A DNA stretch of 39,396 nt, taken from the NCBI RefSeq assembly GCF_001194135.2, contig NC_068991.1, forward strand, positions 2,940,156 to 2,979,551, written 5' to 3'. This stretch comes from Octopus bimaculoides. Its lineage: Eukaryota. Under the pieces are notes generated by a model that saw only the letters and a list, made by a program, of their open reading frames with translations, was not told the origin of the DNA and ran no database searches. A program made the translations under genes and the position numbers. Positions within the stretch are counted from its first letter, which is position 1. The number at the start of each line of letters is the position of its first letter. Positions 13,359 through 38,561 of the stretch are shown here, in pieces.

Positions 13359-13374
13359 CACGAGGCTCCAGCAT

Positions 13375-13680
13375 GGGCTGGACGTTTTGACTGGGCTGGC
13401 GTGCTGGAAGGCTGCACCAGACTCCAATCAAATTTGGCAAAGTTTCTACAGCTGGATGCCCTTCCTAATGCCAACCACTCCGAGAGTGTAGTGGGAGTGT
13501 TTACGTGCTATTTGCCATTTGCCTGACACCAGGTTCCATTTTCCACGGGTGCCATTTGCCTGACACCAGGGTGCATTTATATGCCACCGGCATGGGTGCC
13601 AATTTGTGTCACACCAGTATCTGCCACAACTGTTGTGATTTTGCTCAGCTTGATGGGTCTTCTTCTCAAGAACGGCATAA
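13375..13680 (-). mobile_element. RTE-type 3' tail copy in reverse orientation
   Basis: TTTCTACAGCTGGATGCCCTTCCTAATGCCAACCACTC is the reverse complement of 78-112. Confidence 0.8.
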
Positions 13681-13892
13681 TCTTTACTACTCTAGGCACA
13701 AAGCTCAAAATTTGTGGGGAGGGGTCAGTCAATTAGATCGACCCTAGTATGCAACGGGTACTTAATTTATCAACCCCGAAAGGATGAAAGGCAAATTTGA
13801 CCTTGGCAGAATTTGAACTCAGAACATAAAGAAAGACAAAATACTGCTAAGCATTTCGCCCAGTGTGCTAACATTTCTGCCAGCTCCCCCCA
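13681..13892 (-). mobile_element. SINE family B (GAGCTGGCAGAA head), reverse copy
   Basis: Reverse complement reads GAGCTGGCAGAAATGTTAGC...GAGTTCAAATTC...CCTTTCATCCTTTCGGGGTTGATAAATTAAGTACC; homologous to 19277, 30810 and 37295. Confidence 0.8.
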
Positions 13893-14964: not shown

Positions 14965-16377
14965 TTAATTGCGGAGTCACTATCAGAACTAGAGAAGTTT
15001 CAGGTGTGGAAGCAAGGTCTAGAATTGAAGGGCCTTAGAGTCAACCTAGCTAAAACCAAAATCCTAATAAGTAGGAAGGTAGATAAAACACAAACCCCTT
15101 CAGGTAGATGGCCCTGCTCAGTATGTAGAAAAGGAGTAGGTAGTAACTCTATAAGATGTACCCGGTGCAAGCTATGGACACATAAGAGGTGCAGCAACAT
15201 CAAAGGCAGGTTAACTAGCAAGTTAGTTTTTGTTTGTGGCAGATGTTCAGGTGCAATAAAGACTGTAAACAAACAGGAAACAACTTCTATCTCATTCCAG
15301 GGTGANNNNNNNNNNNNNNNNNNNNNNNNNNNNNNNNNNNNNNNNNNNNNNNNNNNNNNNNNNNNNNNNNNNNNNNNNNNNNNNNNNNNNNNNNNNNNNN
15401 NNNNNNNNNNNNNNNNNNNNNNNNNNNNNNNNNNNNNNNNNNNNNNNNNNNNNNNNNNNNNNNNNNNNNNNNNNNNNNNNNNNNNNNNNNNNNNNNNNNN
15501 NNNNNNNNNNNNNNNNNNNNNNNNNNNNNNNNNNNNNNNNNNNNNNNNNNNNNNNNNNNNNNNNNNNNNNNNNNNNNNNNNNNNNNNNNNNNNNNNNNNN
15601 NNNNNNNNNNNNNNNNNNNNNNNNNNNNNNNNNNNNNNNNNNNNNNNNNNNNNNNNNNNNNNNNNNNNNNNNNNNNNNNNNNNNNNNNNNNNNNNNNNNN
15701 NNNNNNNNNNNNNNNNNNNNNNNNNNNNNNNNNNNNNNNNNNNNNNNNNNNNNNNNNNNNNNNNNNNNNNNNNNNNNNNNNNNNNNNNNNNNNNNNNNNN
15801 NNNGCCACACCCTAACAGTTGAGGGAACCCGTGGAAGAGGTAGGCCCAGGAAGACCTGGGCTGAGGTGGTGAGGCAAGACCTTCGTACATTGGGCCTCAC
15901 CGAGGCAATGACTACTGACCGAGACCTTTGGAAATGTGCTGTGTGTGAGAAGATCCAGCAAGCCAAGTAAGATCATTGCCAGTACCCCTGGACTGGCTCT
16001 TGTGCGGGTGGCACATAAGATGCACCATTTTGAGCGTGGCCGTTGCCAGTACCGCCCGACTGGCTTCCGTAGGATTTTCGAGCGAGATTGTTGCCAGTGC
16101 CCCTGGATTGGCTTGTGCGGGTGGCACATAAAAGACACCATTTCGAGCGTGGCCGTTGCCAGTATCGCCTGACTGGCCTTCGTGCAGGTGACACGTAAAA
16201 GCACCTACTACACTCTCTGAGTGGTTGGCGTTAGGAAGGGCATCCAGCTGTAGAAACTCTGCCAAATTTAGATTGGAGCCTGGTGTTGCCATCTGGTTTC
16301 ACCAGTCCTCAGTCAAGTCGTCCAACCCATGCTAGCATGGAAAGCGGACGTTAAACGATGATGATGATGATGATGAT
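14965..16377 (+). mobile_element. 5'-truncated RTE-clade LINE: RT C-terminal part with a Cys/His finger, N-gap, C-terminal RGRP motif, structured 3' UTR and (GAT)n tail
   Basis: 14965-15304 encodes LIAESLSELEKFQVWKQGLELKGLRVNLAKTK (segment after the YADD motif) followed by CSVC...CTRC..WTHKRC...CGRC; 15804-15970 encodes GTRGRGRPRKTWAEVVRQDL...*. Gap at 15306-15803. Confidence 0.85.
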
Positions 16378-19016: not shown

Positions 19017-19158
19017 GGTGCCCTAACTGCTGACGAAGTTGCTGCCCTTATGTCAAACTACCAATACACGGGTGCCACAACCAACATCCACCCTTATCTC
19101 TCTGCTATGGTCAACTATGCTCAACCCGTCAAGTTCCAGTCGTTTGAAATAGCGGAAG
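19017..19158 (+). CDS. PLCB4: PLC-beta4/norpA-like exon: end of X-Y linker and start of Y box (GALTADE...[29 protein letters not shown])
   Basis: tttcAG|GGT...GAAG|GTACTT; matches vertebrate PLCB4 [23 protein letters not shown] as recalled; phase 0 to 1. Confidence 0.95.
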
Positions 19159-19276: not shown

Positions 19277-19447
19277 GAGCTGGCTGAATTGTTAACATGT
19301 TGAATAAAATGCTTTGTAGCATTTCCTCTGGCTCTTTACATTCTGAGTTCAAACCCTGCTGAGGTCAACTTTGTCTTTCATTCTTTCTGGGCCAATAAAG
19401 TAAAGTATTAATCAAGTACTGGGGATGATGTAATCGACTTGCCCCCA
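19277..19447 (+). mobile_element. SINE family B copy
   Basis: GAGCTGGCTGAATTGTTAAC...GAGTTCAAACC...GGGGATGATGTAATCGAC is homologous to the other family B copies. Confidence 0.75.
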
Positions 19448-20384: not shown

Positions 20385-20469
20385 AGCGGAACATCCATTA
20401 CCACATGTCGTCGTTCAACGAGAACGCAGGTTTAGGCTATTTAAAAACTCAGGCTATAGAATTTGTCAA
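20385..20469 (+). CDS. PLCB4: PLC-beta Y-box alternative exon A, (E)[27 protein letters not shown](N)
   Basis: cttccAG|AG CGG...GTC AA|GTATCCTT; 85 nt, phase 1 to 2; nearly identical to vertebrate PLCB4 [29 protein letters not shown] as recalled. Confidence 0.95.
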
Positions 20470-20477
20470 GTATCCTT
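20470..20477 (+). promoter_or_regulatory. U12-type 5' splice site GTATCCTT after exon A
   Basis: Matches the minor-spliceosome donor consensus RTATCCTT; codon phase fits the exon at 27442. Confidence 0.9.
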
Positions 20478-20812
20478 GTTCGTTCTAAACTTAAACCAAA
20501 AAAAAAAAAAGAGGAGAAAAGAAAAAAAGAAAAACTCCCAATTCTACCTGCTGTTGAGCCCTGATGGGAATGGGAACTCAAAATGATCGAGCATTTGGAA
20601 CCCTGCAAACAAATGTCAATCTGTTGATTTTGCTACCCTGGCCTGCCCTACCGCCACTCGCTTTTCCCCCATTTTTCTTTATATATTGTATATCTAGGTA
20701 TTATGTGTGTGTGTGTCTGTGTGTGCATGTGTGTATGTGTGTGTGTGCACTTTTAATAGGTGGTCCCCCTTGGTTCAAACACAAAGCTTTACAGCAGTTC
20801 ATAAAGCAGGTT

Positions 20813-21298
20813 NNNNNNNNNNNNNNNNNNNNNNNNNNNNNNNNNNNNNNNNNNNNNNNNNNNNNNNNNNNNNNNNNNNNNNNNNNNNNNNNNNNNNNNN
20901 NNNNNNNNNNNNNNNNNNNNNNNNNNNNNNNNNNNNNNNNNNNNNNNNNNNNNNNNNNNNNNNNNNNNNNNNNNNNNNNNNNNNNNNNNNNNNNNNNNNN
21001 NNNNNNNNNNNNNNNNNNNNNNNNNNNNNNNNNNNNNNNNNNNNNNNNNNNNNNNNNNNNNNNNNNNNNNNNNNNNNNNNNNNNNNNNNNNNNNNNNNNN
21101 NNNNNNNNNNNNNNNNNNNNNNNNNNNNNNNNNNNNNNNNNNNNNNNNNNNNNNNNNNNNNNNNNNNNNNNNNNNNNNNNNNNNNNNNNNNNNNNNNNNN
21201 NNNNNNNNNNNNNNNNNNNNNNNNNNNNNNNNNNNNNNNNNNNNNNNNNNNNNNNNNNNNNNNNNNNNNNNNNNNNNNNNNNNNNNNNNNNNNNNNNN
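20813..21298. other. Assembly gap inside the intron between exons A and B
   Basis: Run of N. Confidence 1.
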
Positions 21299-21552
21299 TA
21301 TATATATATATAAGTTTATAATACAAGAAGATGGAATGAATAGGCTTTGATCCAAATCACTACAATCGTTTCTGTGCATTAGTATCAGTTGGTAATTGCT
21401 GAGTGTTTCATATATTAAACACGTCATTGCATTGATATGATTCAGCAATAGGCGTGGACCTGCATGACTTCATGTAGGTTGGGTCAACCTATACCCTGTG
21501 AGCAAAATAGCACGGGCAGAAACTGTGCAGAGGGCCTTTGATAAACCTGTAG

Positions 21553-21589
<37 letters not shown>

Positions 21590-22542
21590 CACATGTAATG
21601 GAAAAAACCCAGTGCAGCCAAAAATTGCTTGCAGCATTTTATTCAGTATTGGTCACTTCTCTTTGTAGTTGATTCAGTTTGTCTTTCATTGTCCAGCAAG
21701 ATCAGTGAAATCAGTGCCAGACAAAGTACTGGACTGAGAGGTCATCATAATTGTTAACCACCCCACATCAGTATTTGAAGCCAGTTATCCGTAACTGTTT
21801 TCCTTCAACCCCATTGTCATTGCAGCTCCTTGTCGGAACAGGGCACCAATTTTACAGTAAGGATCCCACCTACCTATCTGGGTACTTAGTGGCCTACCAA
21901 CCTATTTATAAATTTATCTACCTACCTACCTAATTACCTACCTACCTGCCTACCTCTCTTTTTCTCTCTCTCTATTGCCACAACTTCCACACCCCAAAAC
22001 AGCCATCTTCCCAGTAGCAAACTGTTCCACAGGTCCAGAAATACTACGGAATTGAAACAGGATTCGATGGACTGACAAAGGACATTTTAGATTTCATTCA
22101 CCTTTCTACCGAGAACAGGTCTTGCTCTAGAAGATTAGAGGCTGTTTCAAGTCAATTAATTAATTAATTAATTGATTGATTAATTAATTAATCCATTAAA
22201 ACAATGGTCTGATTTCTAACTAAATTGTCAACCTTTAACTTCCATCTCCTCCAGAGCCAGTAAATAATTAAAGGTAATGCAGTCAATAGTTACAGGTAAT
22301 TAGCATTATGTCTAGTTAAAAAAAAACAACAACAAAAGATATTCATTATCATTGTTACTGATGTTGTTGTTATTGTTTTTGTTGAATTTCTTTTAACAAC
22401 TGAAAATATTTTGTGAATTTTAATATTTATCTAACTTGTTTTCTCTTGATATTAATTTAAATGTAATGTTTTAAATTTGATTTTACAAACATACCATATA
22501 CTACAATTAATATGCATACACACTCATACACATCTGTGCATG

Positions 22543-22584
<42 letters not shown>

Positions 22585-23626
22585 CAGACGCGCACATACA
22601 CAGAGACAGAGGATAGTGGAAAAATATAAACCTCACTTTAATGGTAGTTGGAGTTGCAGGTTCTGCTTGGCTGAGAAGAGGATCATACTAAAGAACTCTT
22701 TTCACCCAGGCACCTATCTTAATCATAAGAGTGAAATTTTCTAATCCTGTCCACATGAGTGCAGGTTTGTCTTAGCATACTGGTTGGCAACATATCAGTT
22801 TTTTCCCCCCATCTAAAATCTGAGGAGTAAATATAGGACTTGCTACATCCATTTGTGGTATATATACATACATAAACACATATTTGACTCAACACAATTT
22901 TAAAATTAAACCTCTGCAACCATCTCCCATCTCTACTCACTCCACGTGACTACACAACTCTTCTCTTACTTGGTCCAACCCCACCCTACAAGTAAGTATC
23001 CAGCATACTATGATGGGCTTTTTTCCAGATCTCAATCCAAGGGATGTAACTCCGGTGAACTAAAATGTTTTTCTCCCTCAGTTCCGAACTGGACAATTTC
23101 ATTCTGGGTTTTACAACAGATATAAAAACAGCTGAATGAATGTGACACATTCAGACTTCCAGAAGGAAAAGCGCTTGCATCATACCATTCCTTACAGCCT
23201 TTTCTGATGATTGTTGGGATTATCTCAACTCTTGGTATGAAACTGATAGATGAAGCTGTTCATGTGAGAATATAATATTGCATTTTATTATTATACACGT
23301 GTGTGTGTGTGTGTGTGTGTGCCTGGACACTGTCTGTACTTGAAGAGACATTTGACCGTTTATAGAAGCAATCCCTCTACGCACATATACATTCCCCCCC
23401 TCTCTCTCTCTCTCTCTCATCTCTCTGCATCTTTCTCTCACGTTTGTGTTTTTTTTTCTCACTACTCCTACCATTGATGTTGTTGCTAATTATTAATGTC
23501 ATTGTTGTTGTTGTTGCATGAATCGTTGTTGTTTTCATTTGTTTTTGTTGTGTTTTTATTTATTTTCACTTCTTTTTGGTGTCGTTTTTTTCTTTTCTTC
23601 TTTTTTCTTTTGGTTTTATTTGCAAG

Positions 23627-23711
23627 CTAGAAGACTTCATTACAACATGTCTTCGTTCAACGAGAACGCAGGACTGAGTCTCATCAAACACAGCTGCTTG
23701 GATTTTGTTGA
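23627..23711 (+). CDS. PLCB4: PLC-beta Y-box alternative exon B, (A)[27 protein letters not shown](D)
   Basis: Long U-rich tract then ttgcaAG|CT AGA...GTT GA|GTATCCTT; 85 nt, same phases as exon A, no stop codons. Confidence 0.9.
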
Positions 23712-23719
23712 GTATCCTT
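23712..23719 (+). promoter_or_regulatory. U12-type 5' splice site GTATCCTT after exon B
   Basis: The first 11 nt (GTATCCTTGTT) are identical to the exon A donor. Confidence 0.9.
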
Positions 23720-23892
23720 GTTGTATTGTGCTCTGTCCGTCCATCCCTCCATCCATCCTTCTGTCCATTTGTCTGTGTGTCTATATCTGGTGGGGGAGTG
23801 GTGAGGGGACAAGGATGATAATACCAAAGTTAAATAGATGCATAGTGTTAATTGTGTGTGTGGAGTAGTGGGTGCAGCTTTGAATCATATTC

Positions 23893-25477: not shown

Positions 25478-25680
25478 GCACAGGTGTGGCTGTGTGGTAA
25501 TTAGCTTGCTTCCCAACCACATGGTTCTGGGTTCAGCTCTACTACATGGCACCTTGGGCAACGACGAAAGCCTTGTGAGTGGATTTGGGAGACAGAAACT
25601 GAAAGAAACCCATCGTATATATATATATATATATATATGTTTGTGTGTCAGTGTTTGTCCCCCCAACAGTTGTCAAGTGA
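25478..25680 (+). mobile_element. SINE family A, 5' half
   Basis: Homologous to the 37508-37905 copy, including its internal (AT)n/(GT)n VNTR. Confidence 0.85.
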
Positions 25681-25708
25681 TGTTGGGGGAACAAACACAC
25701 ATACCCAA

Positions 25709-25770
<62 letters not shown>

Positions 25771-25862
25771 GAAGACACTTACCCAAGGTGCCACACTGTG
25801 GGACTGAACCTGGAACCATGTGGTTGGGAAGCAAGCTATTTACCAAACAGCCACACCTGCAC
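25681..25862 (-). mobile_element. SINE family A, 5' half, inverted and abutting the previous copy
   Basis: Reverse complement reads CAGGTGTGGCTGTTTGGTAAATAGCTTGCTTCCCAACCACATGGTTCCAGGTTCAGTCCC. Confidence 0.85.
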
Positions 25863-27421
25863 CTACACTCTGTCACACACACAGACCAATTTAAATTCAA
25901 ATTACATACCAACTAACCAAATAACTCCACGTGTTTTCCTGTATGTCTGAAGGGAAATGAGGAAATTATGAAAAGCACCAGTTTTATAGTCCATATATTA
26001 TTTGACTAGAATCCACAGTTGGATATGTCATAAAGTACATCATAGAAAGCCATAAAGGAGATAGTTTGCTCATAAAATATTTAGTTTCACCATCATTAAC
26101 AAACAATGATAATTAGTTATTTATAATGTAAATTATATGATCCAATTGCATTGTCAAATCTTCAGAGATTCATAATTCTCATTTTTAATTTGTAAAATTA
26201 AGAATGAGAATTACGAATCTCTGACGATTTGACAACTTCAGTTTAGGAATGGAGGTCTTGGTATTGCATTTCTTCCTTCATAAAGCATTTCAGAAATACA
26301 TGGTTCATATCCATTATGAATACACTGGATTGGTGACAGTGTTGCTATCAGTGGACAATGTAACTGGATGATATAATTTATATAATGTATGACTAATTAT
26401 TATTCCTTGTTAATGAAATGTGTGTAAGATGATGTTAACTGAATATCTGAATGAGGTGATTAACTGTGGCTGTTTGGGATGCTAACAATTTGGCATAGCT
26501 GACTGGAGATTGAACCTATTTGAGCCACAGTACTTTTTGGCACTGGAGGCAAACAGAGAGAGAGGGGGGGGAGGTGCAGCAATACAATCTGATGTCAAGT
26601 AAGTCACCATTGACTCAGCAATGCCAAATAAATGGCACCAAAATGCATAGATCATTGTTGATGTAAAAAATGGATAAACTGATGCTTTCCAAGAAATATA
26701 TCCTGTAGTATCAGGCTTCTTTAAGTCTCCCTTCAGAAATATAATGGACCAGTGATTGGCTCACTGGAGATTTATAACTTACAAGATTACTGTTCTCAAA
26801 AGAGGGAAATAAACTAGAGAAGAATATGAATGGATGTGAATGTGTGACTATATATTTATGTGTGTGTGTGTATATAAATGTGTGCACGTGCACACACACA
26901 CACACATAGTGAGAGAGCGAGAAAGAGCATAAAGGGAGATAATATGTGTGTGTGTAAATTCATATAACTATACATATATATANNNNNNNNNNNNNNNNNN
27001 NNNNNNNNNNNNNNNNNNNNNNNNNNNNNNNNNNNNNNNNNNNNNNNNNNNNNNNNNNNNNNNNNNNNNNNNNNNNNNNNNNNNNNNNNNNNNNNNNNNN
27101 NNNNNNNNNNNNNNNNNNNNNNNNNNNNNNNNNNNNNNNNNNNNNNNNNNNNTATATATATATTTTGTTAGGCATGCTAATGATTCAACACACTCACCAC
27201 TTTAATAATAATAATGATATTAATAATAATAATAAAGAAGAAGAAGAGTTTTTTGTTGCTATATGGCTGATGGATGGGGACCAATTCCAAAATGTTGTTG
27301 CAGTGGGGGTCTTTTTATCATGTGTTTAACCATAATAATAATAATAATAATAATTTTGTTCTTTTAATGCTCTGCCCTTTTCAATAAAAGATTTTCCCCC
27401 ACCCCACAATATGCTGCCATT

Positions 27422-27441
27422 TTCCTTAACACGTTCCCCAG
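27422..27441 (+). promoter_or_regulatory. U12-type branch point TTCCTTAAC and short 3' splice site
   Basis: TTCCTTAACACGTTCCCCAG: consensus minor-spliceosome branch site ending 11 nt before the exon, with no extended polypyrimidine tract. Confidence 0.92.
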
Positions 27442-27514
27442 TTATAATAAGCGCCAAATGAGTCGTATTTACCCAAGAGGTGGAAGAGTCGATTCCAGTA
27501 ATTATATGCCACAG
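27442..27514 (+). CDS. PLCB4: PLC-beta Y-box exon [24 protein letters not shown]
   Basis: Signature Y-box motif [13 protein letters not shown]; CAG|GTAAGT donor; phase 2 to 0. Confidence 0.97.
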
Positions 27515-29225: not shown

Positions 29226-29329
29226 ATCTTCTGGAATGCAGGTTGCCAAATGGTGGCGTTGAATTTCCAAACTCCAGACCTTGCTATGCAGCTTAATCAG
29301 GGAAAATTTGAATACAATGGAAACTGTGG
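29226..29329 (+). CDS. PLCB4: PLC-beta Y-box exon [34 protein letters not shown](G)
   Basis: cacAG|ATC...TGT GG|GTAAGC; conserved [14 protein letters not shown] motif. Confidence 0.97.
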
Positions 29330-29420
29330 GTAAGCTGATAGTTTTGATAATTCTTATCATTTTAATTATAATTTACCTTAGTCTTAAATTCTTAAAGTCT
29401 ATGGTATTGTATATACATAC

Positions 29421-29492
<72 letters not shown>

Positions 29493-30258
29493 GTAATTAT
29501 ATATATATATATATTATTAATGCTAAATAATACCTAGTTCATAAAATATGCTTCGACACACGAATTCACATAAAGAATCTTGCAAACCACTTACAAAAAC
29601 GAAATATGTGATTAACTCATTTTTGTGTTTCATCTTTCTAATTACCTAACAATTATATTCAGTGGCTTCGTAATACCATTAATATAACAGTCCTATCTCC
29701 AGACACTAAAACTATCAGAATCCCTAGCTAGGCAGCCGATGAAGGCTAAATTGTTTATTGTTCTCTCTGTTACATAGTTTTCTTGCTTGTGCTTATTGTT
29801 TACATTGAAGTGTCTGTTTGTGTGTGTGTTTTCATGTGCTGGTTCATTTTAATGTCCTTTTTTTATCCATGCTAAAATGTGTTTTATTAAAAACACTGCT
29901 ATATTCAAGTTTGATCATTTTTATTGAGGATTTTTTACATTTCCATGAAACCTTTATGAGATTGTGCTAAAAGTTTTAAATGGATTTAGAAGAAACATTG
30001 TCTTATACGGAGCTAATAATGAAATATGAAAGATGCAGAATGAAAATGATCAAACTTGAATGTTGTCGTAATTTGAATGTTTAAAAGAAAAGTTTCTCTT
30101 ATTCACACACACACACACACACACACATACACACACACACACACACACACATGATATTAAGAAAGAAAAAGAAGAGCAAAAATAATGTTGATATTTAACA
30201 TTTTTTTTTTTTTTCTTGTGTCTTCCTCTTCTCCTCTGATGGCTCCTGCTTTCTTTAG

Positions 30259-30361
30259 ATACCTGCTGAAACCTGACTTCATGAGGAGGCCAGACCGGAC
30301 ATTTGACCCATTTTCAGAAAGCCCTGTAGATGGCGTCATTGCCGGACATTGTTCAGTTGAG
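30259..30361 (+). CDS. PLCB4: PLC-beta exon [34 protein letters not shown] (end of Y box, start of C2)
   Basis: ctttAG|A TAC...GAG|GTAAGT; phase 2 to 0. Confidence 0.97.
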
Positions 30362-30664
30362 GTAAGTTCACTTTACAGTTTGTCCAGATAATCCCTTGTC
30401 CAGATAATCCCTTAAATATTTACTTTAAACATTTGGATATTATTTGTTCGTCCATGTTTTCTGGTATCATATTTTAATCAACTGGAGTGGATTAAGATTA
30501 AGCTTGCAGTTTATCACTTTCAGATCTTATTGTACAGAGTACAAATAGAGATTTTTATCTGTTGGCAGATATCAGCACTGATCAGCAAACAGTTTTCTTC
30601 ACTGAAATTATAAACAAATCCAGTGACATCTGTAAGGTTAAACATCCTGGTGTTTCTAGCTGAC

Positions 30665-30760
30665 AAGTCAATAAATTAAGTACTAGTAAAGCACTGGGGT
30701 CAGTGTGATCAACTGGTCCCCTCCTCCCAAATTTCAAGCCTTGTGCCTTCCATAAAAAGG

Positions 30761-30810
<50 letters not shown>

Positions 30811-30985
30811 GACAGTGAGCTGGTAGAATCGTTACAGCACCAGGCAAAATGCTTAGAGGCATTTCATCAGTCTTTAAAGTCCTGAGTTCAAATTCCACCG
30901 AGGTCAACTCTGCCTGTCATCCTTTCGGAGTTAATGAAATAAGTACTAGTTATGTGCTGGGGTCAATGTAATCAACTAGACCTCC
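30665..30985 (+). mobile_element. Two SINE family B fragments separated by (ATT)n
   Basis: 3' part at about 30665-30760 and a head-containing copy at about 30810-30985. Confidence 0.75.
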
Positions 30986-30986
30986 C

Positions 30987-31019
<33 letters not shown>

Positions 31020-31404
31020 AGGTAGAATAGCAGAAAAGGGAGTGGGTAGGTAAGTGCACTAGAGTGTGAACAGTGTTACAAGTGATTAGAGATGGGGTAT
31101 GAAGTGAACATAGCGAGTATCGATTTGGGGGAGGGGAAGAAACAGGAGTGGGACAAAAAATAGTATATATATATATATATATATATTTGATGTCATCTGG
31201 GTAATAACCTCATAATGTGCATTTCAAAGCTCCAATACAGTTATTGGCTACCATGTGCCATCATACAGCAAGAATACTTCTTTTACTGAATATACAAGTG
31301 GAACTCTGTGAGTGTATGCAGAATTTGAATAAAAGTTTATAAAACAAGAAAATGGAATTCCAAGAACATGTTGTTATCATTTGAATTGTCATTTCTAATT
31401 ACAG

Positions 31405-31569
31405 GTAATCTCTGGTCAGTTCTTATCTGATAAAAAAATTGGAACATGCGTTGAGGTGGATATGTATGGTCTACCAACTGACACCATTCGTAAGGAATTT
31501 CGCACCAAAGTAGTACCAAATAATGGTCTCAATCCAATCTATAATGATGAGCCATTTGTCTTCAGAAAG
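31405..31569 (+). CDS. PLCB4: PLC-beta C2-domain exon [32 protein letters not shown]...EPFVFRK
   Basis: acAG|GTA...AAG|GTATGA; 165 nt, open frame. Confidence 0.97.
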
Positions 31570-31944
31570 GTATGATGTCTTTTTTATTTTCTTCATTTTT
31601 TTTCTTCTTATTTTCTTCTGGGTGGATGAGATGGAACAGAGGTAAATTTTTAGATTCGGAACGAACTATTTGATGTTTACCTTGTCAGGTATATCGCTGT
31701 GCCCCAGTATGGCCTCTGCCAATTGATTGGAATAAGTAAAAATGTTTTGTTTTTATCTTGTTTTGTTTCCGTTGTGGCCAGGACAAGTAACATAAAGAAC
31801 GACCCTTCATCAGTTGTCGGCTGTCTATCTACACCTCATTTCGAGCATTGAACAACAATATACTCCTGCACCTATGTATAATGCAACTGAACACACACAC
31901 ACACACACGCCTACATACACACACACATGCAATGTATACATTGC

Positions 31945-31976
<32 letters not shown>

Positions 31977-32081
31977 TTGTGTGTGCACATGTGTGTTCAC
32001 ATACCCCCACCCCACACACACACACACAAAAGTTTACTGTTTGAGAACTTTGTCGATTGTTATTTGGTTTTCGTCTTCCAG

Positions 32082-32181
32082 GTAGTACTACCTGATCTGG
32101 CAGTTCTTCGGATTGCTGTGTATGAAGACACTGGTAAGCTGATCGGTCAGCGGATCCTGCCATTGGACGGATTACAAGCTG
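32082..32181 (+). CDS. PLCB4: PLC-beta C2 exon [33 protein letters not shown](G)
   Basis: ccAG|GTA...GCT G|GTAAGT. Confidence 0.97.
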
Positions 32182-32523
32182 GTAAGTGGACTTCATTGTA
32201 TCTTTGGTGGTAAGGTCAGTGTCGGTCAGTGTCTGATTTTTTTTTTTTTATAAGTGGGTTGAACAAGTGTACCCAGGGCTACAATATCGAGTGTGCCCTT
32301 TCAACCAATAAAGAACCTTCTATTCTGTAGGTTGATCTGCTGAGCACAGCAGCCAAATCCCCCTGAAATCCCTACAGAAAGAGAGGTCTATGGTTGGTAC
32401 ACCTTTGATTGTAGACCTGCTGGATCATATCTAAACAACCCCCACACTTTGTGACCCTCACATAATTAACCTGACGGACAGTTTACTAAAAACTATTTTC
32501 TTTCCTTCTTCTCCTCCACTCAG

Positions 32524-32628
32524 GCTATCGGCATATATCACTACGAACAGAAGGCAATTTTCCCCTATCATTACCGACAGTTTTCTGTCGAATCATCCTG
32601 AAGACCTATGTCCCAGAAGGCTTTGAAG
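32524..32628 (+). CDS. PLCB4: PLC-beta C2 end exon (G)[34 protein letters not shown](D)
   Basis: ctcAG|GC TAT...GAA G|GTAATT; too short for the ORF track. Confidence 0.96.
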
Positions 32629-32724
32629 GTAATTTATCAACATTTTTATCCTATTTCTTCCTTTCTTCTTTTTTTGGCTATTATTATTGGTGCAACAGGG
32701 TAGATACCAGCCTGCCTGGAGCAA

Positions 32725-33380
32725 AAAATGACTGGACAAGTGTACCACCATGCATTTTGGGAGGAAGAGCTCAACATCCACATACTCTCTCCACAGCATT
32801 AATATCAAGAAGTGACCTGGGCTTTACTGTCAGCAGTGATTTATGCTGGACAAGGCACGTCTCTAAAATTGTCAAGAAGGCCGAGGGTGTCTTGGCATCA
32901 CTCAGGAAAGCTTTTGTCATCGCTCTCCAGCTATCTATTTAAGGTTATATATGACTATTTATAATTTGCATTACCATTCTGGAACCCGTATCTTGTTCAG
33001 GACATTGACCTCCTGGAAACTGTTCAGAGACGTGCAACCAAGCGAATACCCTACATCTGGCATCTGCCATACTCTGAGCAACTTGCTTCCCTGGGCTTAG
33101 ATACATTGAAGCTTCAATGTCTGGCAACTGACTTGGTAAACACCCACAAAATTATTAACCACCGTGCCAGTCTTGAGCACCTTTTCGAGCTCCATGTGTC
33201 TAATACACATGTGGGCATGCCCTGCAAAGTCAGAAAACAGCACAGCTCCCATGACTTTCGGAAACATTTTTTCACCCCCTCCGAGTTGCTGAACAAACTA
33301 CCTGCATCAGTTGTTAGCTGCCAAGATATTGCATCCTTTAAAACCTCCAGGCTTCCTGAAATCTACCAACACAACACCTG
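32725..33380 (+). mobile_element. CR1-clade LINE 3' fragment (frameshifted RT C-terminus)
   Basis: Motifs [52 protein letters not shown]...NKLPASVV. Confidence 0.8.
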
Positions 33381-33534
33381 ATATCCCCCGCCTCCATACG
33401 CATGCACACATGTATATCATGACTCATACACTTCCTCCTCCTCCTCTGTAATTTTCTATTTCATGGCTAATAGAGCCATGTTTGTCTGATGAAGAAGCTA
33501 ACTCACCCATGTCTATATGTTTTACTCTCAACAG

Positions 33535-33798
33535 ATTTTGTGTCTGCTGTGTCAGCACCAATCCAATTTCAATCCATGGCAGACAAGAGAGAACAACTTA
33601 TGCTCGGGATGGGGATCGATGAAAATGATATCGGGGATGTACCTGTGGCAAAAGAGAAAAACAAATCTACCCAGAATGAAAATGTCAAACCAACTCCTCA
33701 GACACCAAACGGCCCTTCCAAAGACCAAGTGAAGGAAATTCCTAAACAGTCCAAACAGATGACATCAACATCACAACCTCCACCTGCCAAAAAAGACG
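33535..33798 (+). CDS. PLCB4: PLC-beta proximal CTD (Gq-binding helix-turn-helix and autoinhibitory helix) plus CTD linker
   Basis: caacAG|AT TTT...GAC G|GTTCGT; FVSAVSAPIQF...KREQLMLGMGIDENDIGDVP aligns with PLCB4 IVDALSDPKKF...[20 protein letters not shown]. The donor was chosen for phase match to 34281. Confidence 0.88.
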
Positions 33799-34280
33799 GT
33801 TCGTATTCTCCTCCATTTTCTTGTTTTTTTTTAGTTTGTTTTTATATTTGTTGTTGCACTTTAATCCTTTTGATACCGACCCAGCTAGAATTGCTTCTTG
33901 CTCTGTGGTACAGATGTCGTGTTTTCAAAAGTTCTGGATTAGATTTATATTTAGAATTAATGGAAAAGGTGAAGAAAGAAAATAATCAGTAGAAGACATG
34001 AGAGAAGGGGACTTCAATGTGGTCCCTCTATATGCTAGCAATAACAGCCTAAATTTCCTTCAATCCACACCCTTCCAACTGCTTCTAATGTACATCTGCC
34101 CAAATGTAGAACTGTACCTGGGGGTATTACCTTACTAGCAATTTTGATTTACAAACTTACAATTTAGCAGCCTTGCTCAGCAATCTGATAGTTTTTAAAC
34201 AAATGTGTGGTCATTTAACATGCTAGAAATAAGAAGTCAACTATAAACGATCTTTAAAAATCCGTATTTCTCATATACAG

Positions 34281-34509
34281 AGGAGCTTCAGTTTGACAAG
34301 ATAACACGTGAAAGTCTGATGCAGGAGAAAGTCTACGTCCGTTTGATAAAGAAACAGCAGAGAGAAGTAGAGATAATGAAGAAGAAACACCAGAAAGAAA
34401 AATGTGTGATGTCCAAACAGCAATGTACCTCTGTCGAAAAAATGACGGCACTCCATGAGAAAGAGAAGGCAGCCATGGAGAAATCATGGGAGAAGTTAAA
34501 GAAGAAAAA
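34281..34509 (+). CDS. PLCB4: PLC-beta distal CTD coiled-coil exon (ELQFDKITRESLMQEKVYVRLIKKQQREVE...KLKKK)
   Basis: tacAG|AG GAG...AA|GTGAGT; aligns with PLCB4 KAYLKHLKKQQKEL...KKHAKE. Confidence 0.93.
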
Positions 34510-34623
34510 GTGAGTATTTGCCATTATTTTCTCATTTCATTTACCATTTCTCTTCCAATGATCATCTTCTGCATCGATTTTCTTTTCTTCCTCCTCTGTT
34601 TATATTTTATTTATTTTAATTTT

Positions 34624-34899
<276 letters not shown>

Positions 34900-34900
<1 letters not shown>

Positions 34901-35069
34901 TGTGCTGTGGGCAGCAAATGATGGTACCAGAGTGGTTGGAAGACCACAGAAGACGTATATACAACAGCTTGAAGAAGATGTTGCAGAAGATGTGGGATTC
35001 CAAGATGAAGACCTAAAAACTCTAATGGAAGATCAGGAGGGATGGAGAGAGGTAGTCAGGCTGACCTGA
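34900..35069 (+). mobile_element. C-terminal fragment of a second RTE-like LINE
   Basis: VLWAANDGTRVVGRPQKTYIQQLEED...LMEDQEGWREVV resembles the RTE C-terminal pattern LW.P..G.R..GRP..TY...L..D...M.DR..WR. Confidence 0.65.
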
Positions 35070-35339
35070 GCAATCAGCCTAACTGGGTGATGCTTTGATT
35101 AAGAAAAAAAAAAAAAAGGGGGAGGGCTTTTATTTAGAAAGAAGTTAAGAGTTAATGGCTGTGACTTTTCTGTCAAACTCTTGCCCTTACCTCAGACAGG
35201 TGGCGTTTATGTGGTTGAAGAAAACTAAAACCTTGTTGTGGTAAAGGAAAGCTAAATGAGATTTTAAAGTTGGTTAATAAAGTTCTGAAGGCCCTGTTGT
35301 TTGTTCTCTCTGACTTTGTGATTTTGTCTGCCATTACAG

Positions 35340-35406
35340 TGACGATACCACCTTAAACAGTAAGGAAGATAAACTCCAAGCACTGATAGCTGCTCAAAAA
35401 TCAAAG
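35340..35406 (+). CDS. PLCB4: PLC-beta distal CTD exon (N)DDTTLNSKEDKLQALIAAQKSK
   Basis: ttacAG|T GAC...AAG|GTAAGA; phase 2 to 0 bridges the flanking exons; resembles PLCB4 KIQTLTSDHKSK. Confidence 0.85.
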
Positions 35407-36050
35407 GTAAGACAAGCTTTGAGGAAATTATTCTTCCTCGTAATATTTGTGAATGTAATTGTGTGTGAATGAGAGAGAGGGAGAGAGAGAGAAATGGTCT
35501 CTAGATTACATCTGATGTGATGAACTTCCAAGATTAACAAACACTTCTTCTTCCTGTTTGTCTGTTAAACCAAGGCTTGACTATATATGAAATGATATTC
35601 CTAAATAATTAAATATGTATATTTATTGTTGCTATTATGTTAAACTGTCATATGTCCAAATTCACATAAATACTTTTTTTTTCAATATCAATTTTTGCTT
35701 GCAATAACCAGTTCTTTTGGTCAAACTATCATAACTCCTACTGCTTCAGATGCCAAGATATCAAAAATTGTCAAAGTGTAGTACAACGGTTTTGCTATGG
35801 AATGTTGAAACTATTTTTTCGTTTTCTGAAAAAGGAACGTTTTGGACTTTTACATAATAGCAGCGATATAAACATATATGTAAAAGTAATCATGCTGGTG
35901 CCATGTTAAAAATACTCCAGCTGACCCATAGGAAAGTGGACATTAAAACAATGATGTTAATGATGATGACGTATATTACACAAAATTACAAAACCCACAC
36001 ACACACACAAATACTTGTTAATTAGGCTGTATTTGTTGACGTTTGTGCAG

Positions 36051-36226
36051 GTAAACCTTCTGGTGTCTGAACACACCAAAGAATGGTCAGACATGAATGC
36101 CAGACAATTGAAGGAGGAACACGAGCTGAACAAGGCCCACATTTTACAGCAGAACACCACAAATAATCGGCTTGTGGAGGAAGTACAACAGACCCAGTTG
36201 AAGGAATTGGAACTGAAACAAGACAG
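36051..36226 (+). CDS. PLCB4: PLC-beta distal CTD exon VNLLVSEHTKEWSDM...ELKQD(R)
   Basis: gcAG|GTA...AG|GTAAGA; HTKEWS motif as in PLCB4. Confidence 0.94.
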
Positions 36227-36424
36227 GTAAGAATACACCTGTACAGGTGTACAGAATGATATAAAGAGAGTAATATTGTCATTGTTTAACCATAGGTCAC
36301 TTTTGATCAAGCTGTTCTATGGGTCAAAGACTTTAAAACCGTGACTATCTCATCTTATTTTTCATACATAGTATATCTGGGACTACATTATCCAGTGTGT
36401 TCTTTCATGTTTTAAAAATATTAG

Positions 36425-36560
36425 GTGATTTTAAGCGAGTGGGGGCTGGAGCTGTTTCTAGCTAGTTGAGTGTGATTTAAAGGAGAGACTGGTGCTATTT
36501 CTAGCTGGTCAGGTGTGATTTAAGGGCAAGATGGGTGCTATTTCTAGCAGATAAGGTGAT
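36425..36560. repeat. Diverged 41-47 bp tandem triplication
   Basis: GTGATTT...GCT(A/G)TTTCTAGC unit repeated three times; a related single fragment lies near 24905-24950. Confidence 0.7.
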
Positions 36561-37053
36561 CATACAGAGATTTATTCATTGGCTCACAGTGAGTAGTGTT
36601 GGGTAGAGAGTCGTTGTGTTTAACCCGGGGTCAAACTTGATCCCCCCCCCCTCCAAGCCATGAGCAAAGGTGTTGCATGTGTGAACATTCTTTTAAAAGG
36701 ACTTCAAGATGGTGCAATAAATATTGTTAATGTCACCGGAATATATCAGGTGAGGAGATGGAGAGAGAAAGAGAGGGGGATGTGGGTGTTTTTTTTTTGG
36801 GTGGGGGGGTCCTGTGTGTACCTGTATGTATGTGAGGATGGCCAACAGTAATAAAGACAAGCGAAAGTTCCTCATGGCAGGAATCTGTAAAGTATATGAA
36901 CTTTCAGTTGTGTCACATCAAAAATACAGAATAGGTTCGTTTTGATCTGATTAGAATTCCTCAATAACGATGCATATTTTACTGAATTCAGGTAAAATAA
37001 TAATATTGTCCTAACTTCACCAAAAAAAAAAACCCTCTTCTTTCCAATTCCAG

Positions 37054-37155
37054 AGACAACAAAGAACTGAGGACGATCCAAGCCAAACAATCGATGGAGT
37101 CTAGCAAAGCTGTACTGAATGACAAGTCAATCAAGAACAAAGCTGAAAGAGACAG
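37054..37155 (+). CDS. PLCB4: PLC-beta distal CTD exon [33 protein letters not shown](R)
   Basis: ccAG|A GAC...AG|GTGAGT; [10 protein letters not shown] as in PLCB4. Confidence 0.96.
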
Positions 37156-37294
37156 GTGAGTAACTGTCAAAGGGGGAGGTAATGGCAGCAGGGGGCATCG
37201 GCAGTGGCAGTGGGGGTAGCAGCAGCAGCAGTGGCAGCAGCAGCAGTGGTGGTGGTAAAACTGTTTAGCTCCAGGCATTTTTCTCAGATTCAAT

Positions 37295-37450
37295 GAGGCA
37301 GAATCGTTAGCGTGCTGAGCAAAACACTTAGCAGTAATATTTCGCCCATTGCTCCTTTCTGAGTTCAAATTCTGCCAAGGTTGATTTTGCCTTTTCTCCT
37401 TTGGGGTCAGTAAATTAAGTACCAGTTGCATACTGGGGTCGATCTAATCT
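37295..37450 (+). mobile_element. SINE family B copy
   Basis: GGCAGAATCGTTAGC...GAGTTCAAATTCTGCCAAGG...AAGTACCAGTTGCATACTGGGGTCGATC. Confidence 0.8.
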
Positions 37451-37507
37451 TTTAAGTTTAAAAGTTTAAATGTCGTTAAACTGCCAATAAATAATCTCAG
37501 CTGCTTA

Positions 37508-37905
37508 GGCAGGAGACGCTGTGTGATAAGTAGCTTGCTTACCAACCACATGGTTCTGGGTTCAGTCCCACTGCGTGGCACCTTGGGCAAGTGTCTTCTA
37601 CTATAGACTCAGGCTGACCAAAGCCTTCTGAGTGGATTTGGTAGATCGAAACTGAAAGAAGCCCATTATATATGTGTGTGTGTGTGTGTGTGTGTGAGTA
37701 TATGTGTGTGTGTGTTTGTCCCCTCCACCATCACTTGACAACCGATGTTGGTGTGCTTACGCCCCCCATAATTTAGTGGTTTGGCAAAAGAGCCCGATAA
37801 AATAAGAACTAGGCTTACAAGGAACAAGTCCTGGGGTCGATTTGTTCGACTAAAGGCGGTGCTCCAGTATGGCCGCAGTCAAATGACCAAAACGAATAAA
37901 AGAAT
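37508..37905 (+). mobile_element. Apparently full-length SINE family A (~400 bp, tRNA-like head, internal VNTR)
   Basis: B-box-like GGTTCAGTCCC, central (GT)n, 3' end GGCGGTGCTCCAGTATGGCCGCAGTC...AATAAAAG; ends about 50 nt upstream of an acceptor. Confidence 0.85.
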
Positions 37906-37958
37906 ATAATCTTTTTGTTGAGTTTAATCTGGTCTTGTTATGGTGTTTTATATTACAG

Positions 37959-38103
37959 GAGGATAAGAGAACTGAACGAGAACAATACAAAGAAATTTAT
38001 TGAAGAAAGGAAACGTTTAGCTGTAAAACATTCCAGGCAGGTAGAAGCCATTAAGAAAGTTCATAGCCAACAAGCAGAAGAGTTGCAAAAGGAGAATGAA
38101 AAA
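37959..38103 (+). CDS. PLCB4: PLC-beta distal CTD exon RIRELNENNTKKFIEERKRLA...KENEK
   Basis: tacAG|G AGG...AAA|GTAAGA; matches PLCB4 [21 protein letters not shown]. Confidence 0.96.
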
Positions 38104-38561
38104 GTAAGATCCCCCTTCTGTAATATTACAGATATCTTCTCTATACAAATATTAACCATGTCAATGATAGGGGTAAAATATGAGTTTTAAATTAATCAAA
38201 TAATTATATATATTAATTATGTAATTGACGCTGAAAGAGTTAGAAGGGCCAGACAATGCAAAATGGGCCATTATTGTTGGTACTGTTGGTCTTTTATGGG
38301 TCTAATATTTCGGGATCAACAATAATGGTCTGTTTTGCATTGTTTAGCCTTCTAAACTCTTTCAGCGTCACATATCATATACAATGCTTCAAGCAAACCA
38401 CAACATTTTATTAATTATGTAATTATTATAAATAATGAAATGTTATGCCATTGAAACAGCTGTTGAGCACAGTTACATTATGTTTTATGGGTGAAATTTA
38501 TGCTTTTCTGCTTATTACTCGAAATGTGCTACACTCAATGATCATTTTAGCTGATTCTGTG

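What the first reader, a model, noticed from the sequence alone, without database searches (positions are those of the whole stretch)
20385..23711. Tandem duplicated, mutually exclusive catalytic-domain exons in a PLC-beta4/norpA gene
Two 85-nt exons with identical phases (1 to 2) encode [29 protein letters not shown] and [29 protein letters not shown]. Both are stop-free with intact splice sites. Including both or neither shifts the frame, because 85 is not a multiple of 3. The neighbouring exons are single-copy, so this is not a gene duplication. The known Drosophila norpA alternative exon 4 lies in the N-terminal region, not here. I do not recall a described Y-box exon pair in a PLC-beta, but could not search.
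Basis: partly seen in the sequence, partly recalled or inferred. Interest (0 to 1): 0.92.

Follow-up and report, generated by a model that had tools for sequence, protein, structure and literature searches.

The report
Mutually exclusive exons in octopus PLC-beta4
Two interchangeable 85-base exons in the catalytic domain of the octopus PLC-beta4 gene are real, expressed, older than the mollusc-flatworm split and already listed as isoforms in RefSeq; what seems undescribed is that both end in minor-spliceosome (U12-type) splice sites, which would force the cell to use exactly one of them.

Summary
Exon A (20385-20469) and exon B (23627-23711) are each 85 nt, in the same phase, with AG/GT borders. 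Including either one gives an open 620-aa frame; including both or neither gives an early stop.

The window is Octopus bimaculoides PLCB4. My two gene models are 100% identical to RefSeq isoforms X2 (A) and X1/X3 (B), so the pair is already annotated. I found no paper describing it.

Fully spliced RNA-seq contigs of other cephalopods carry either A or B. Both exons are under strong purifying selection (0 and 3 nonsynonymous changes against 10-16 synonymous).

The same A-then-B tandem occurs in gastropod, brachiopod and cestode genomes. A/B isoform pairs are annotated in bivalves and a nemertean. A sea cucumber and mammalian PLCB1 have one exon.

[quoted passage not shown] The next exon is preceded by TCCTTAAC 11 nt from its acceptor. 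All other splice sites look U2-type. This is the JNK exon 6a/6b layout, in which spliceosome incompatibility enforces one-of-two choice.

The assembly gap lies inside the A-B intron and does not affect the conclusion.

Verdict: a real, ordinary kind of feature and a new member of a known kind. Interest is moderate.

The parts
19017..19158 (+). Upstream constitutive exon (GALTADEV...FQSFEIAE plus 1 nt), with a U2-type donor AAG|gtacttca
   Evidence: The donor has 5 mismatches to GTATCCTT.
20385..20469 (+). Exon A, 85 nt: the canonical version ([29 protein letters not shown])
   Evidence: Present in RefSeq XP_052827398.1 (P0366) and in 7 decapodiform transcript-derived proteins. There are 14 synonymous and 0 nonsynonymous differences from the decapodiform exon A.
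20470..20480 (+). U12-type 5' splice site of exon A (GTATCCTTGTT)
   Evidence: The same octamer follows exon A in Elysia, Biomphalaria, Lingula and Hymenolepis.
20813..21298 (.). Assembly gap (N run) inside the A-B intron
   Evidence: It touches no exon. The layout is confirmed in gap-free relatives.
23567..23626 (+). Long pyrimidine tract and U2-type 3' splice region of exon B (83% pyrimidine; no U12 branch-site match)
23627..23711 (+). Exon B, 85 nt: the divergent version ([29 protein letters not shown])
   Evidence: Present in RefSeq XP_052827397.1 (P0367) and P0361. Spliced into mRNA in other cephalopods (L003, L004, 6 proteins of the cluster). pN 0.046 against pS 0.64-1.0.
23712..23722 (+). 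U12-type 5' splice site of exon B (GTATCCTTGTT)
   Evidence: Its use with the 27442 acceptor is shown in a relative by L003 and L004.
26983..27152 (.). Second assembly gap, inside the B-to-next-exon intron
27423..27430 (+). U12-type branch-point sequence TCCTTAAC, 11 nt upstream of the acceptor
   Evidence: It is the only occurrence in the window. It is conserved in Elysia, Lingula and Hymenolepis, and nearly conserved in Biomphalaria, Apostichopus and rodent PLCB1.
27442..27514 (+). Downstream constitutive exon (1 nt plus [24 protein letters not shown])
29226..38103 (+). Eleven further constitutive exons of the same gene (rest of the Y box, C2, C-terminal coiled coil): 29226-29329, 30259-30361, 31405-31569, 32082-32181, 32524-32628, 33535-33798, 34281-34509, 35340-35406, 36051-36226, 37054-37155, 37959-38103
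   Evidence: The spliced product is 100% identical to RefSeq residues 571-1190.

Best explanation
The window holds the 3' half of the Octopus bimaculoides PLC-beta4 gene. One 85-nt exon of the catalytic Y box exists in two tandem copies, and each mRNA uses exactly one.

The copies arose by a tandem exon duplication in an early lophotrochozoan, just upstream of an intron that was already of the minor (U12) type. Both copies therefore kept a U12-type donor (|GTATCCTT), and they share the single U12-type branch site and acceptor of the next exon. The upstream donor and the acceptors of A and B are major (U2) type.

This layout has three consequences:
- The upstream exon can join A or B, through U2.
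- A or B can join only the downstream exon, through U12.
- The A-B intron is a U12-donor/U2-acceptor hybrid that neither spliceosome can remove, and skipping both exons would pair a U2 donor with a U12 acceptor.

Exactly one exon is therefore included. The 85-nt length (a frameshift leading to early stops) acts as a back-up.

The two versions keep the strand that carries the substrate-binding MSSF(N/S)E motif. They differ in the segment that follows, which aligns with PLC-beta2 residues about 574-590. The isoforms therefore probably share chemistry and differ in a regulatory or protein-contact surface.

**Shown:** the exons, their expression, their exclusivity in transcripts, selection, phylogenetic spread and the splice-site sequences.
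**Inferred:** that spliceosome incompatibility is the operative mechanism, and any functional difference between the isoforms.
For: **Anatomy and frame.**

**Identity to annotated isoforms.** The A and B models are 100% identical to the respective RefSeq isoforms.

**Transcripts.**
- L004/P0244 is fully spliced as upstream exon, B, downstream exon.
- L003 has B joined to the downstream exons.
- L010-L012 are fully spliced with A.
- Among the 15 listed members of the decapodiform cluster, 7 carry A, 6 carry B and none carries both. Two stop right after the upstream exon.

**Selection.** Exon A has 14 synonymous and 0 nonsynonymous differences. Exon B has 10-16 synonymous and 3 nonsynonymous.

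**Age.**
- A-then-B tandems of 85 nt each occur in Elysia, Biomphalaria, Lingula and Hymenolepis.
- A/B isoform pairs are annotated in Haliotis, Aplysia, Pomacea, Mytilus, pectinids, Ruditapes, Lineus and Mesocestoides.
- All B exons group apart from A exons plus the single-copy outgroup exons.
- Apostichopus and rodent PLCB1 have a single exon.

**U12 signals.**
- GTATCCTT occurs on the + strand only at the two donors.
- TCCTTAAC occurs once, 11 nt from the acceptor.
- The other 13 donors have at least 3 mismatches, and the other acceptors at least 2.
- The same signals are present in 9 of 10 A/B donors of five genomes and in both single-exon outgroups.

**Literature.**
- JNK exon 6a/6b choice is attributed to a U12-5'ss/U2-3'ss hybrid intron with a long pyrimidine tract (PMC1874599).
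- Only 5 human MXE clusters show this incompatibility (PMC5740500).
- Vertebrate Plcb1/2/3 are minor-intron genes.
Against: - No experiment here shows that these introns are removed by the minor spliceosome, or that incompatibility rather than nonsense-mediated decay plus competition keeps the exons exclusive.
- In the cestode Hymenolepis, exon B's donor is GTAACCCTT, not the U12 consensus, yet the pair persists. The U12 donor on B is therefore not indispensable everywhere.
- The transcript survey is small and comes from assembled contigs. Assembly would under-represent rare double-inclusion or double-skipping products.
- Two truncated products end at this junction, and L003 retains the intron upstream of B. 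Non-productive products therefore do occur.
- Tissue specificity is unknown.
- The link to the Gbeta-gamma peptide region of PLC-beta2 rests on my memory of the residue numbers in Sankaran et al. 1998, which the library does not hold. Mammalian PLC-beta4 is generally regarded as Gbeta-gamma-insensitive (my own knowledge).
Confidence: 0.72

Rival explanations
1. The exons are mutually exclusive, but the U12-type signals are only an inherited feature of the ancestral intron. Exclusivity would come from regulated competition between the two U2-type acceptors, plus removal of frameshifted A+B or exon-less mRNAs by nonsense-mediated decay.
For: - 85 nt is not a multiple of 3, and both or neither gives early stops.
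- In humans, 60% of MXE clusters have such lengths and only 0.79% show U2/U12 incompatibility.
- Hymenolepis keeps the pair with a non-consensus donor on B.
Against: - Both duplicated donors have kept the exact octamer GTATCCTT in molluscs and a brachiopod for over 500 My. Intron sequence is otherwise unalignable.
- The architecture matches the JNK case.
- The two explanations are not exclusive; decay is probably the back-up.
Confidence: 0.2
2. Exclusivity is set by competing RNA secondary structures (docking and selector sites), as in insect Dscam.
For: The introns contain complementary (TG)n and (CA)n tracts on either side of exon B, for example 21547-21595 with 22539-22587 (92% complementary) and 20702-20746 with 25691-25735.
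Against: - These are simple microsatellites of a kind scattered through the whole window.
- No unique conserved pairing was found.
- Only 13 nt upstream of exon B are conserved between octopus and a decapodiform.
- Conservation across cephalopod genomes could not be tested.
Confidence: 0.04
3. Exon B is a decaying pseudo-exon that is never productively used.
For: None found. B is more divergent between phyla than A (mean identity 50% against 78%).
Against: - Fully spliced mRNAs contain B in other cephalopods.
- RefSeq isoforms contain B in three Octopus species.
- pN 0.046 against pS of at least 0.64.
- The frame is intact, the length is 85 nt and splice sites are present in five phyla.
Confidence: 0.01
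4. The two copies are an assembly artefact: a haplotig or a mis-joined scaffold around the N gaps.
For: Exon A, exon B and the downstream exon lie on three different contig pieces separated by N runs.
Against: - A and B are only 60% identical in DNA, so they are not alleles.
- The same order and similar spacing occur in gap-free assemblies of other phyla.
- Both versions occur in transcripts of one species cluster.
Confidence: 0.01

Closest known systems
JNK/MAPK8-10 exons 6a/6b (vertebrates)
   Same: - Two tandem homologous exons, of which one is used.
[quoted passage not shown]
- The upstream intron is U2-type and the downstream intron U12-type (PMC1874599; compare).
   Different: - It is a different gene family and an independent duplication.
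- The pair here is found across lophotrochozoan phyla rather than in vertebrates.
- No experimental work exists for it.
- Both exons here carry an identical 11-nt donor region.
Drosophila norpA alternative exon 4 (mutually exclusive; retinal versus non-retinal subtypes)
   Same: It is in the same orthology group (PLC-beta4/norpA) and uses the same principle of two interchangeable exons.
   Different: - It lies in the N-terminal region, not the Y box.
- The arthropod proteins returned here show only the A-like version at this position.
- It is not reported to involve U12 introns.
Minor (U12-type) intron of vertebrate PLCB1/2/3
   Same: Vertebrate Plcb genes are listed as minor-intron genes. In rodent PLCB1, the intron at the homologous position has |GTATCCTT and a near-consensus branch site 12 nt from the acceptor.
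   Different: The vertebrate genes (like the sea cucumber PLC-beta4-type gene) have a single exon in front of this intron and no alternative pair.
Gbeta-gamma-interacting helix of the PLC-beta2 Y domain
   Same: The alternative exon aligns with PLC-beta2 residues 562-590. A helix of the Y subdomain was mapped as a Gbeta-gamma contact by inhibitory and cross-linking peptides (PMC12871268). From memory, those peptides span residues 564-583 and 574-593.
   Different: - That mapping is for mammalian PLC-beta2 and is disputed by later structures.
- Nothing is known about partners of the octopus enzyme.
- The residue numbers come from my memory of a paper the library does not hold.

Membership tests
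PLC-beta, beta4/norpA subfamily | PI-PLC Y catalytic domain | tested here: met
   Pfam PF00387, E = 8e-42, residues 28-142 of the spliced product; the alternative exon is residues 48-76.
PLC-beta, beta4/norpA subfamily | Closest relatives are PLC-beta4 proteins, with a C2 domain and the long PLC-beta C-terminal region | tested here: met
   100% identical to O. bimaculoides 'phosphodiesterase beta-4' isoforms. Best hits across animals are named beta-4 and carry PF00168/PF08703. Solved relatives are PLC21 and PLC-beta3, E = 1e-113 to 1e-104.
PLC-beta, beta4/norpA subfamily | PH, EF-hand and X-box domains | not testable with these tools
   These lie upstream of the window. They are present in the full-length RefSeq proteins that the window matches (Pfam columns).
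Mutually exclusive exon cluster | Adjacent homologous exons of the same length and phase | tested here: met
   85 nt each, phase 1 to 2, 16/29 residues identical, 3157 nt apart.
Mutually exclusive exon cluster | Mature transcripts contain exactly one of the exons | tested here: met
   RefSeq/GenBank isoforms of Octopus: 3 with A and 6 with B. Decapodiform Logan-derived proteins: 7 with A, 6 with B, none with both. This is a small sample and is not quantified by reads.
U12-type (minor) intron, GT-AG subtype | 5' splice site matching RTATCCTT | tested here: met
   Exact GTATCCTT after both exons. The other 13 donors have at least 3 mismatches.
U12-type (minor) intron, GT-AG subtype | Branch-point sequence TCCTTRAY about 10-15 nt upstream of the 3' splice site | tested here: met
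   TCCTTAAC at 27423-27430, 11 nt before the acceptor. Conserved in other phyla.
U12-type (minor) intron, GT-AG subtype | Removal depends on U11/U12/U4atac/U6atac snRNPs | not testable with these tools
   This needs snRNA blocking or depletion. It is supported only indirectly, by vertebrate Plcb genes being treated as minor-intron genes.
JNK-type hybrid-intron exon switch | The intron between the two exons has a U12-type donor but a U2-type 3' end; the flanking introns are U2-type upstream and U12-type downstream | tested here: met
   By sequence only. Exon B's acceptor has an 83% pyrimidine tract and no branch-site match better than 3 mismatches. The upstream donor is gtacttca.
JNK-type hybrid-intron exon switch | Changing splice-site type abolishes exclusivity | not tested
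   This needs minigene experiments.

The most novel reading that the evidence does not exclude
This is an independently evolved counterpart of the JNK 6a/6b switch, spanning several phyla and more than 500 million years old. Duplication of the exon in front of an ancestral U12 intron created a hybrid U12/U2 intron that hard-wires a one-of-two choice. The two versions exchange a segment of the Y domain that aligns with the region once mapped as a Gbeta-gamma contact in PLC-beta2. Molluscs, brachiopods, nemerteans and flatworms would then make two differently regulated PLC-beta4 enzymes from one gene, for instance a photoreceptor form and a neuronal form.
Probability: 0.35. Interest if true: 0.65.

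Novelty: new member of a known kind. Interest (0 to 1): 0.48.

Why it matters
Spliceosome incompatibility is the textbook 'clean' way to make two exons mutually exclusive, but it rests almost wholly on the JNK genes. A survey found only five such clusters in humans.

A second, independent example would be a natural test case for that mechanism and for why minor introns persist. This one has kept the same donor octamer on both copies in lineages (molluscs and a brachiopod) separated for more than half a billion years.

For phototransduction and Gq signalling, it points to two natural variants of the catalytic-domain segment that follows the substrate-binding strand. They occur in the enzyme that drives rhabdomeric vision in cephalopods. 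They can be compared biochemically without any protein design.

It also shows that the isoform pair in RefSeq is an ancient feature, not an annotation quirk.

Tried and rejected
1. **First protein search.** The 135-aa query containing B returned nothing from cephalopods. The tool returned no protein longer than 1.75 times the query length (234 of 135; 1085 of 620). My E-value cut-off also hid exon-only matches. I solved this by querying with the 849-aa transcript product P0244 and listing cluster members.
2. **Gap-free octopus loci.** Fetching O. sinensis or O. vulgaris to bridge the assembly gap failed because the gene spans about 123 kb. The look-up of Mytilus P0416 found nothing. The Priapulus gene is intronless and therefore uninformative.
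3. **Structure prediction.** Predicting the Y-box plus C2 part alone gave a poor model (mean pLDDT 45.5). I do not use its helix assignment, and no contact analysis was possible.
4. **Inverted-repeat scan.** The scan for docking/selector pairs found only microsatellite complementarity.
5. **Literature.** Seven searches for a description of this exon pair, or of a U12 intron in PLCB4, found none. Sankaran 1998 and Lyon 2011 are not held. A search for the peptide names was useless.
6. **Intronic reading frames.** The open reading frames at 32490-33378 gave no Pfam hit, and no tRNA-like genes were found.
7. **Pseudo-exon and assembly-artefact readings.** Both were considered and rejected; see the rival explanations.
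Full report
**1. The observation**

Reading the sequence confirms both exons.
- Exon A is 20385-20469 and exon B is 23627-23711. Each is 85 nt, preceded by AG and followed by GT, and 51 of 85 bases are identical.
- The upstream exon (19017-19158) ends with one extra G. The downstream exon (27442-27514) begins with one extra T.
- I built the rest of the gene model in the window: 15 exon positions, all with AG/GT borders. Including A alone or B alone gives an open 620-codon frame.
- Including both gives a stop at codon 76. Including neither gives a stop at codon 53.
- tblastn of the peptides against the window finds only these two copies (cross-match E = 5e-9). The neighbouring exons are single copy.

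**2. The assembly gap**

- The N run 20813-21298 lies inside the intron between A and B and touches no exon. Frame continuity across it is therefore not at issue.
- What the gaps do mean is that (upstream exon + A), (B) and (downstream exons) sit on three separate contig pieces, so their order depends on scaffolding.
- That order is supported by the identical layout (upstream exon, A, B, downstream exon) in Biomphalaria, Lingula and Hymenolepis with no N between the exons. Elysia has the same layout.
- It is also supported by spliced transcripts (below).
- I could not retrieve the chromosome-level Octopus sinensis or O. vulgaris loci, because the gene spans about 123 kb.

**3. What the gene is**

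- The spliced product carries the PI-PLC Y domain, and the alternative exon lies within it.
- With exon A, the product is 620/620 identical to residues 571-1190 of XP_052827398.1 (O. bimaculoides PLC beta-4 isoform X2).
- With exon B, it is 620/620 identical to XP_052827397.1 (X1) and XP_052827400.1 (X3).
- The window is therefore O. bimaculoides PLCB4, and RefSeq already lists both versions.
- The same holds for O. sinensis and O. vulgaris. Of nine cluster members, three carry A and six carry B.

**4. Expression**

- Logan assemblies of public RNA-seq runs from other cephalopods (about 82% protein identity, presumably decapodiforms) give direct evidence.
- Contig L004 (SRR27666059; protein P0244) is fully spliced from the X box to the stop codon. 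It reads ...FHSFELAE|[29 protein letters not shown]|[11 protein letters not shown]..., that is, upstream exon, B, downstream exon.
- Contig L003 (ERR4030420) has exon B joined to the downstream exons, while 296 nt of the intron upstream of B are still present.
- Three runs give full-length transcripts with exon A (L010-L012).
- Among the 15 listed members of that 17-member cluster, 7 carry A, 6 carry B and none carries both. The two truncated ones stop right after the upstream exon.

**5. Selection**

- Between octopus and the decapodiform transcripts, exon A has 14 synonymous and 0 nonsynonymous differences.
- Exon B has 10-16 synonymous and 3 nonsynonymous differences (pN 0.046; pS 0.64 to saturation).
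- Both exons are under strong purifying selection.

**6. Age**

- A-then-B tandems, each exon 85 nt, are present in the genomes of two gastropods, a brachiopod and a cestode.
- Equal-length isoform pairs differing only in this segment are annotated in Haliotis, Biomphalaria, Aplysia, Pomacea, Mytilus and Ruditapes. The same is true of the nemertean Lineus and the cestode Mesocestoides. In pectinids, B is five residues longer, which keeps the same length modulo 3.
- B-like versions also appear in Lottia, Mya, Tubulanus and the annelid Chaetopterus.
- A neighbour-joining tree of the 29-residue segments puts all B exons of 12 taxa together. They are separate from the A exons and from the single-copy exons of echinoderms, human, Limulus, Priapulus and an onychophoran.
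- Cys at position 24 is invariant in B. B has diverged faster than A (mean identity 50% against 78%). The segment is short, so the tree is suggestive only. The constant gene order adds weight.
- The sea cucumber gene and rodent PLCB1 have a single exon here. The arthropod and vertebrate proteins returned show only the A-like form.
- The simplest reading is one duplication in the lophotrochozoan stem.

**7. The new point: splice-site types**

- Both exons are followed by GTATCCTTGTT. GTATCCTT is the consensus 5' splice site of U12-type (minor spliceosome) introns. On the + strand of the window it occurs only at these two donors.
- The downstream exon is preceded by tTTCCTTAACacgttccccag. TCCTTAAC, the U12 branch-point consensus, occurs once in the window, 11 nt from this acceptor.
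- Every other donor of the gene model has at least 3 mismatches to the donor consensus. Every other acceptor region has at least 2 mismatches to the branch-site consensus.
- The upstream exon's donor (gtacttca) and the acceptors of A and B look U2-type. B has an 83% pyrimidine tract.
- The same pattern holds in Elysia, Biomphalaria and Lingula, where all six donors are GTATCCTT. In Hymenolepis, A has GTATCCTT, B has GTAACCCTT and the branch site is TTCCTTAAC.
- The single-exon outgroups also have a U12-type intron at this position. Apostichopus has |GTATCCTTAT with branch site aCCTTAAC. Rodent PLCB1 has |GTATCCTTGA with tACTTAAC. This fits the listing of vertebrate Plcb1/2/3 as minor-intron genes.
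- The minor intron is therefore older than the duplication, and the duplication copied its donor.

**8. Mechanism proposed**

- The A-B intron is a hybrid, with a U12 donor and a U2 3' end.
- By the model proposed for JNK exons 6a/6b, such an intron cannot be removed. The upstream U2 donor can pair with the acceptor of A or B. The chosen exon's U12 donor can pair only with the single U12 3' site (PMC1874599).
- Skipping both exons would need a U2 donor with a U12 acceptor.
- A survey found only five human clusters with this incompatibility (PMC5740500).
- The frameshift caused by an 85-nt exon is a second safeguard.
- The mechanism is inferred from sequence and from conservation. Nothing here tests it.
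- Two findings show that the system is not perfectly clean: the degenerate donor of Hymenolepis B, and the existence of partly processed or truncated products.

**9. What differs between the isoforms**

- The first half of the exon (H-x-x-MSSF-N/S-E) is conserved in both versions. The differences are concentrated in the second half: [14 protein letters not shown] against GLSLIKHSCLDFVD.
- From my memory of the PLC-delta1 structure, the conserved part is the barrel strand carrying the Ser that contacts the substrate's 4-phosphate, and the variable part is the following surface helix.
- The exon aligns with residues 534-562 of squid PLC21 (3QR1), about 611-639 of PLC-beta3 and 562-590 of PLC-beta2 (2FJU).
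- A helix of the Y subdomain was once mapped as a Gbeta-gamma contact of PLC-beta2 by peptides (PMC12871268).
- From memory, those peptides are residues 564-583 and 574-593. That fits the register of the alignment (an N...K and an E...K 20-mer in the PLC-beta3 sequence), but I could not read the paper.
- I therefore propose, as inference only, that A and B share catalysis and differ in a regulatory or contact surface.
- My own structure prediction of the half-barrel was too poor to use.

**10. Novelty and verdict**

- The exon pair is in public annotation for this very species, so it is not new data.
- Seven full-text searches found no description of it, of a Y-box alternative exon in any PLC-beta, or of a U12-based exon switch outside the JNK-type cases.
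- I file it as a new member of a known kind: a mutually exclusive exon pair with JNK-type spliceosome incompatibility.
The claimed interest (0.92) is too high. The U12 architecture and the great age give it moderate interest.

Noticed in passing
window 1243-1308 (+): A 66-nt in-frame cassette exon of the X-Y linker (DASIGSLNQNSPEVCSSISSPE; cattccag|GAT...GAG|gtacgt). It is present in RefSeq isoforms X1/X2 and skipped in X3 (P0361) and in O. sinensis X4 (P0362). Some O. sinensis and O. vulgaris isoforms add four more residues (DFDK). An N gap follows at 1405-1531.
   Followed up: partly
window 38104-38187 and beyond (gap 38608-38707): The O. bimaculoides RefSeq proteins end in NEKVRSPFCNITDIFSIQILTMSMIGVKYEF, which is read-through into the intron after exon 37959-38103. 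O. sinensis and O. vulgaris end in ...NEKAIESVEMMHREAKLATKPETVV. That last exon is not found in the window. It is probably hidden in a gap or lies downstream, so the O. bimaculoides C-terminus looks like an annotation artefact.
   Followed up: partly
L003 1-296 (Logan ERR4030420): In this transcript, the U12-type intron after exon B and all later introns are already removed, while the intron upstream of B is retained. It is either an intermediate (minor intron spliced first) or a dead-end product retaining the hybrid intron.
   Followed up: no
P0376 and P0380 (decapodiform Logan-derived proteins): Two truncated products stop immediately after the upstream exon. One reads into the intron (…ELAEVSESHLFVPFVS). 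The other reads …ELAEARDRKSVV, which begins like exon B and then departs. These may be non-productive splice products at the switch.
   Followed up: no
L008 6595-6603 (Hymenolepis diminuta): Exon B's donor is GTAACCCTT rather than GTATCCTT, while exon A's donor and the branch site (TTCCTTAAC) keep the U12 consensus. The introns here are only 111-163 nt long.
   Followed up: partly
L009 1001-4567 (Priapulus caudatus): The PLC-beta4-like gene is a single uninterrupted 1188-codon reading frame, possibly a retrogene.
   Followed up: no
Pectinid proteins P0426, P0429, P0431, P0433: The B version is five residues longer (…NETAANAILRHAIHSGTCSGIID), that is about 100 nt. This keeps the same length modulo 3 as 85.
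   Followed up: no
window 1-233, 11837-11981, 13370-13507 (-), 16123-16377; 25481-25860, 34626-34800, 37510-37751; 13723-13886, 19277-19439, 30817-30982, 37297-37448: At least three families of short interspersed repeats (70-89% identity) lie in the introns. Some sit next to (TG)n/(TA)n microsatellites. ARAGORN finds no tRNA-like gene.
   Followed up: partly
window 20702-20746, 21541-21595, 22535-22602, 25689-25750: (TG)n tracts lie after exon A, and (CA)n tracts lie before and after exon B. They are mutually complementary (up to 92%) and could in principle loop out exon B. They are most likely ordinary microsatellites.
   Followed up: partly
window 32490-33378 (+), intron: Two long open reading frames (150 and 138 aa) resemble the C-terminal part of a retroelement protein by eye, but give no Pfam hit.
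   Followed up: partly
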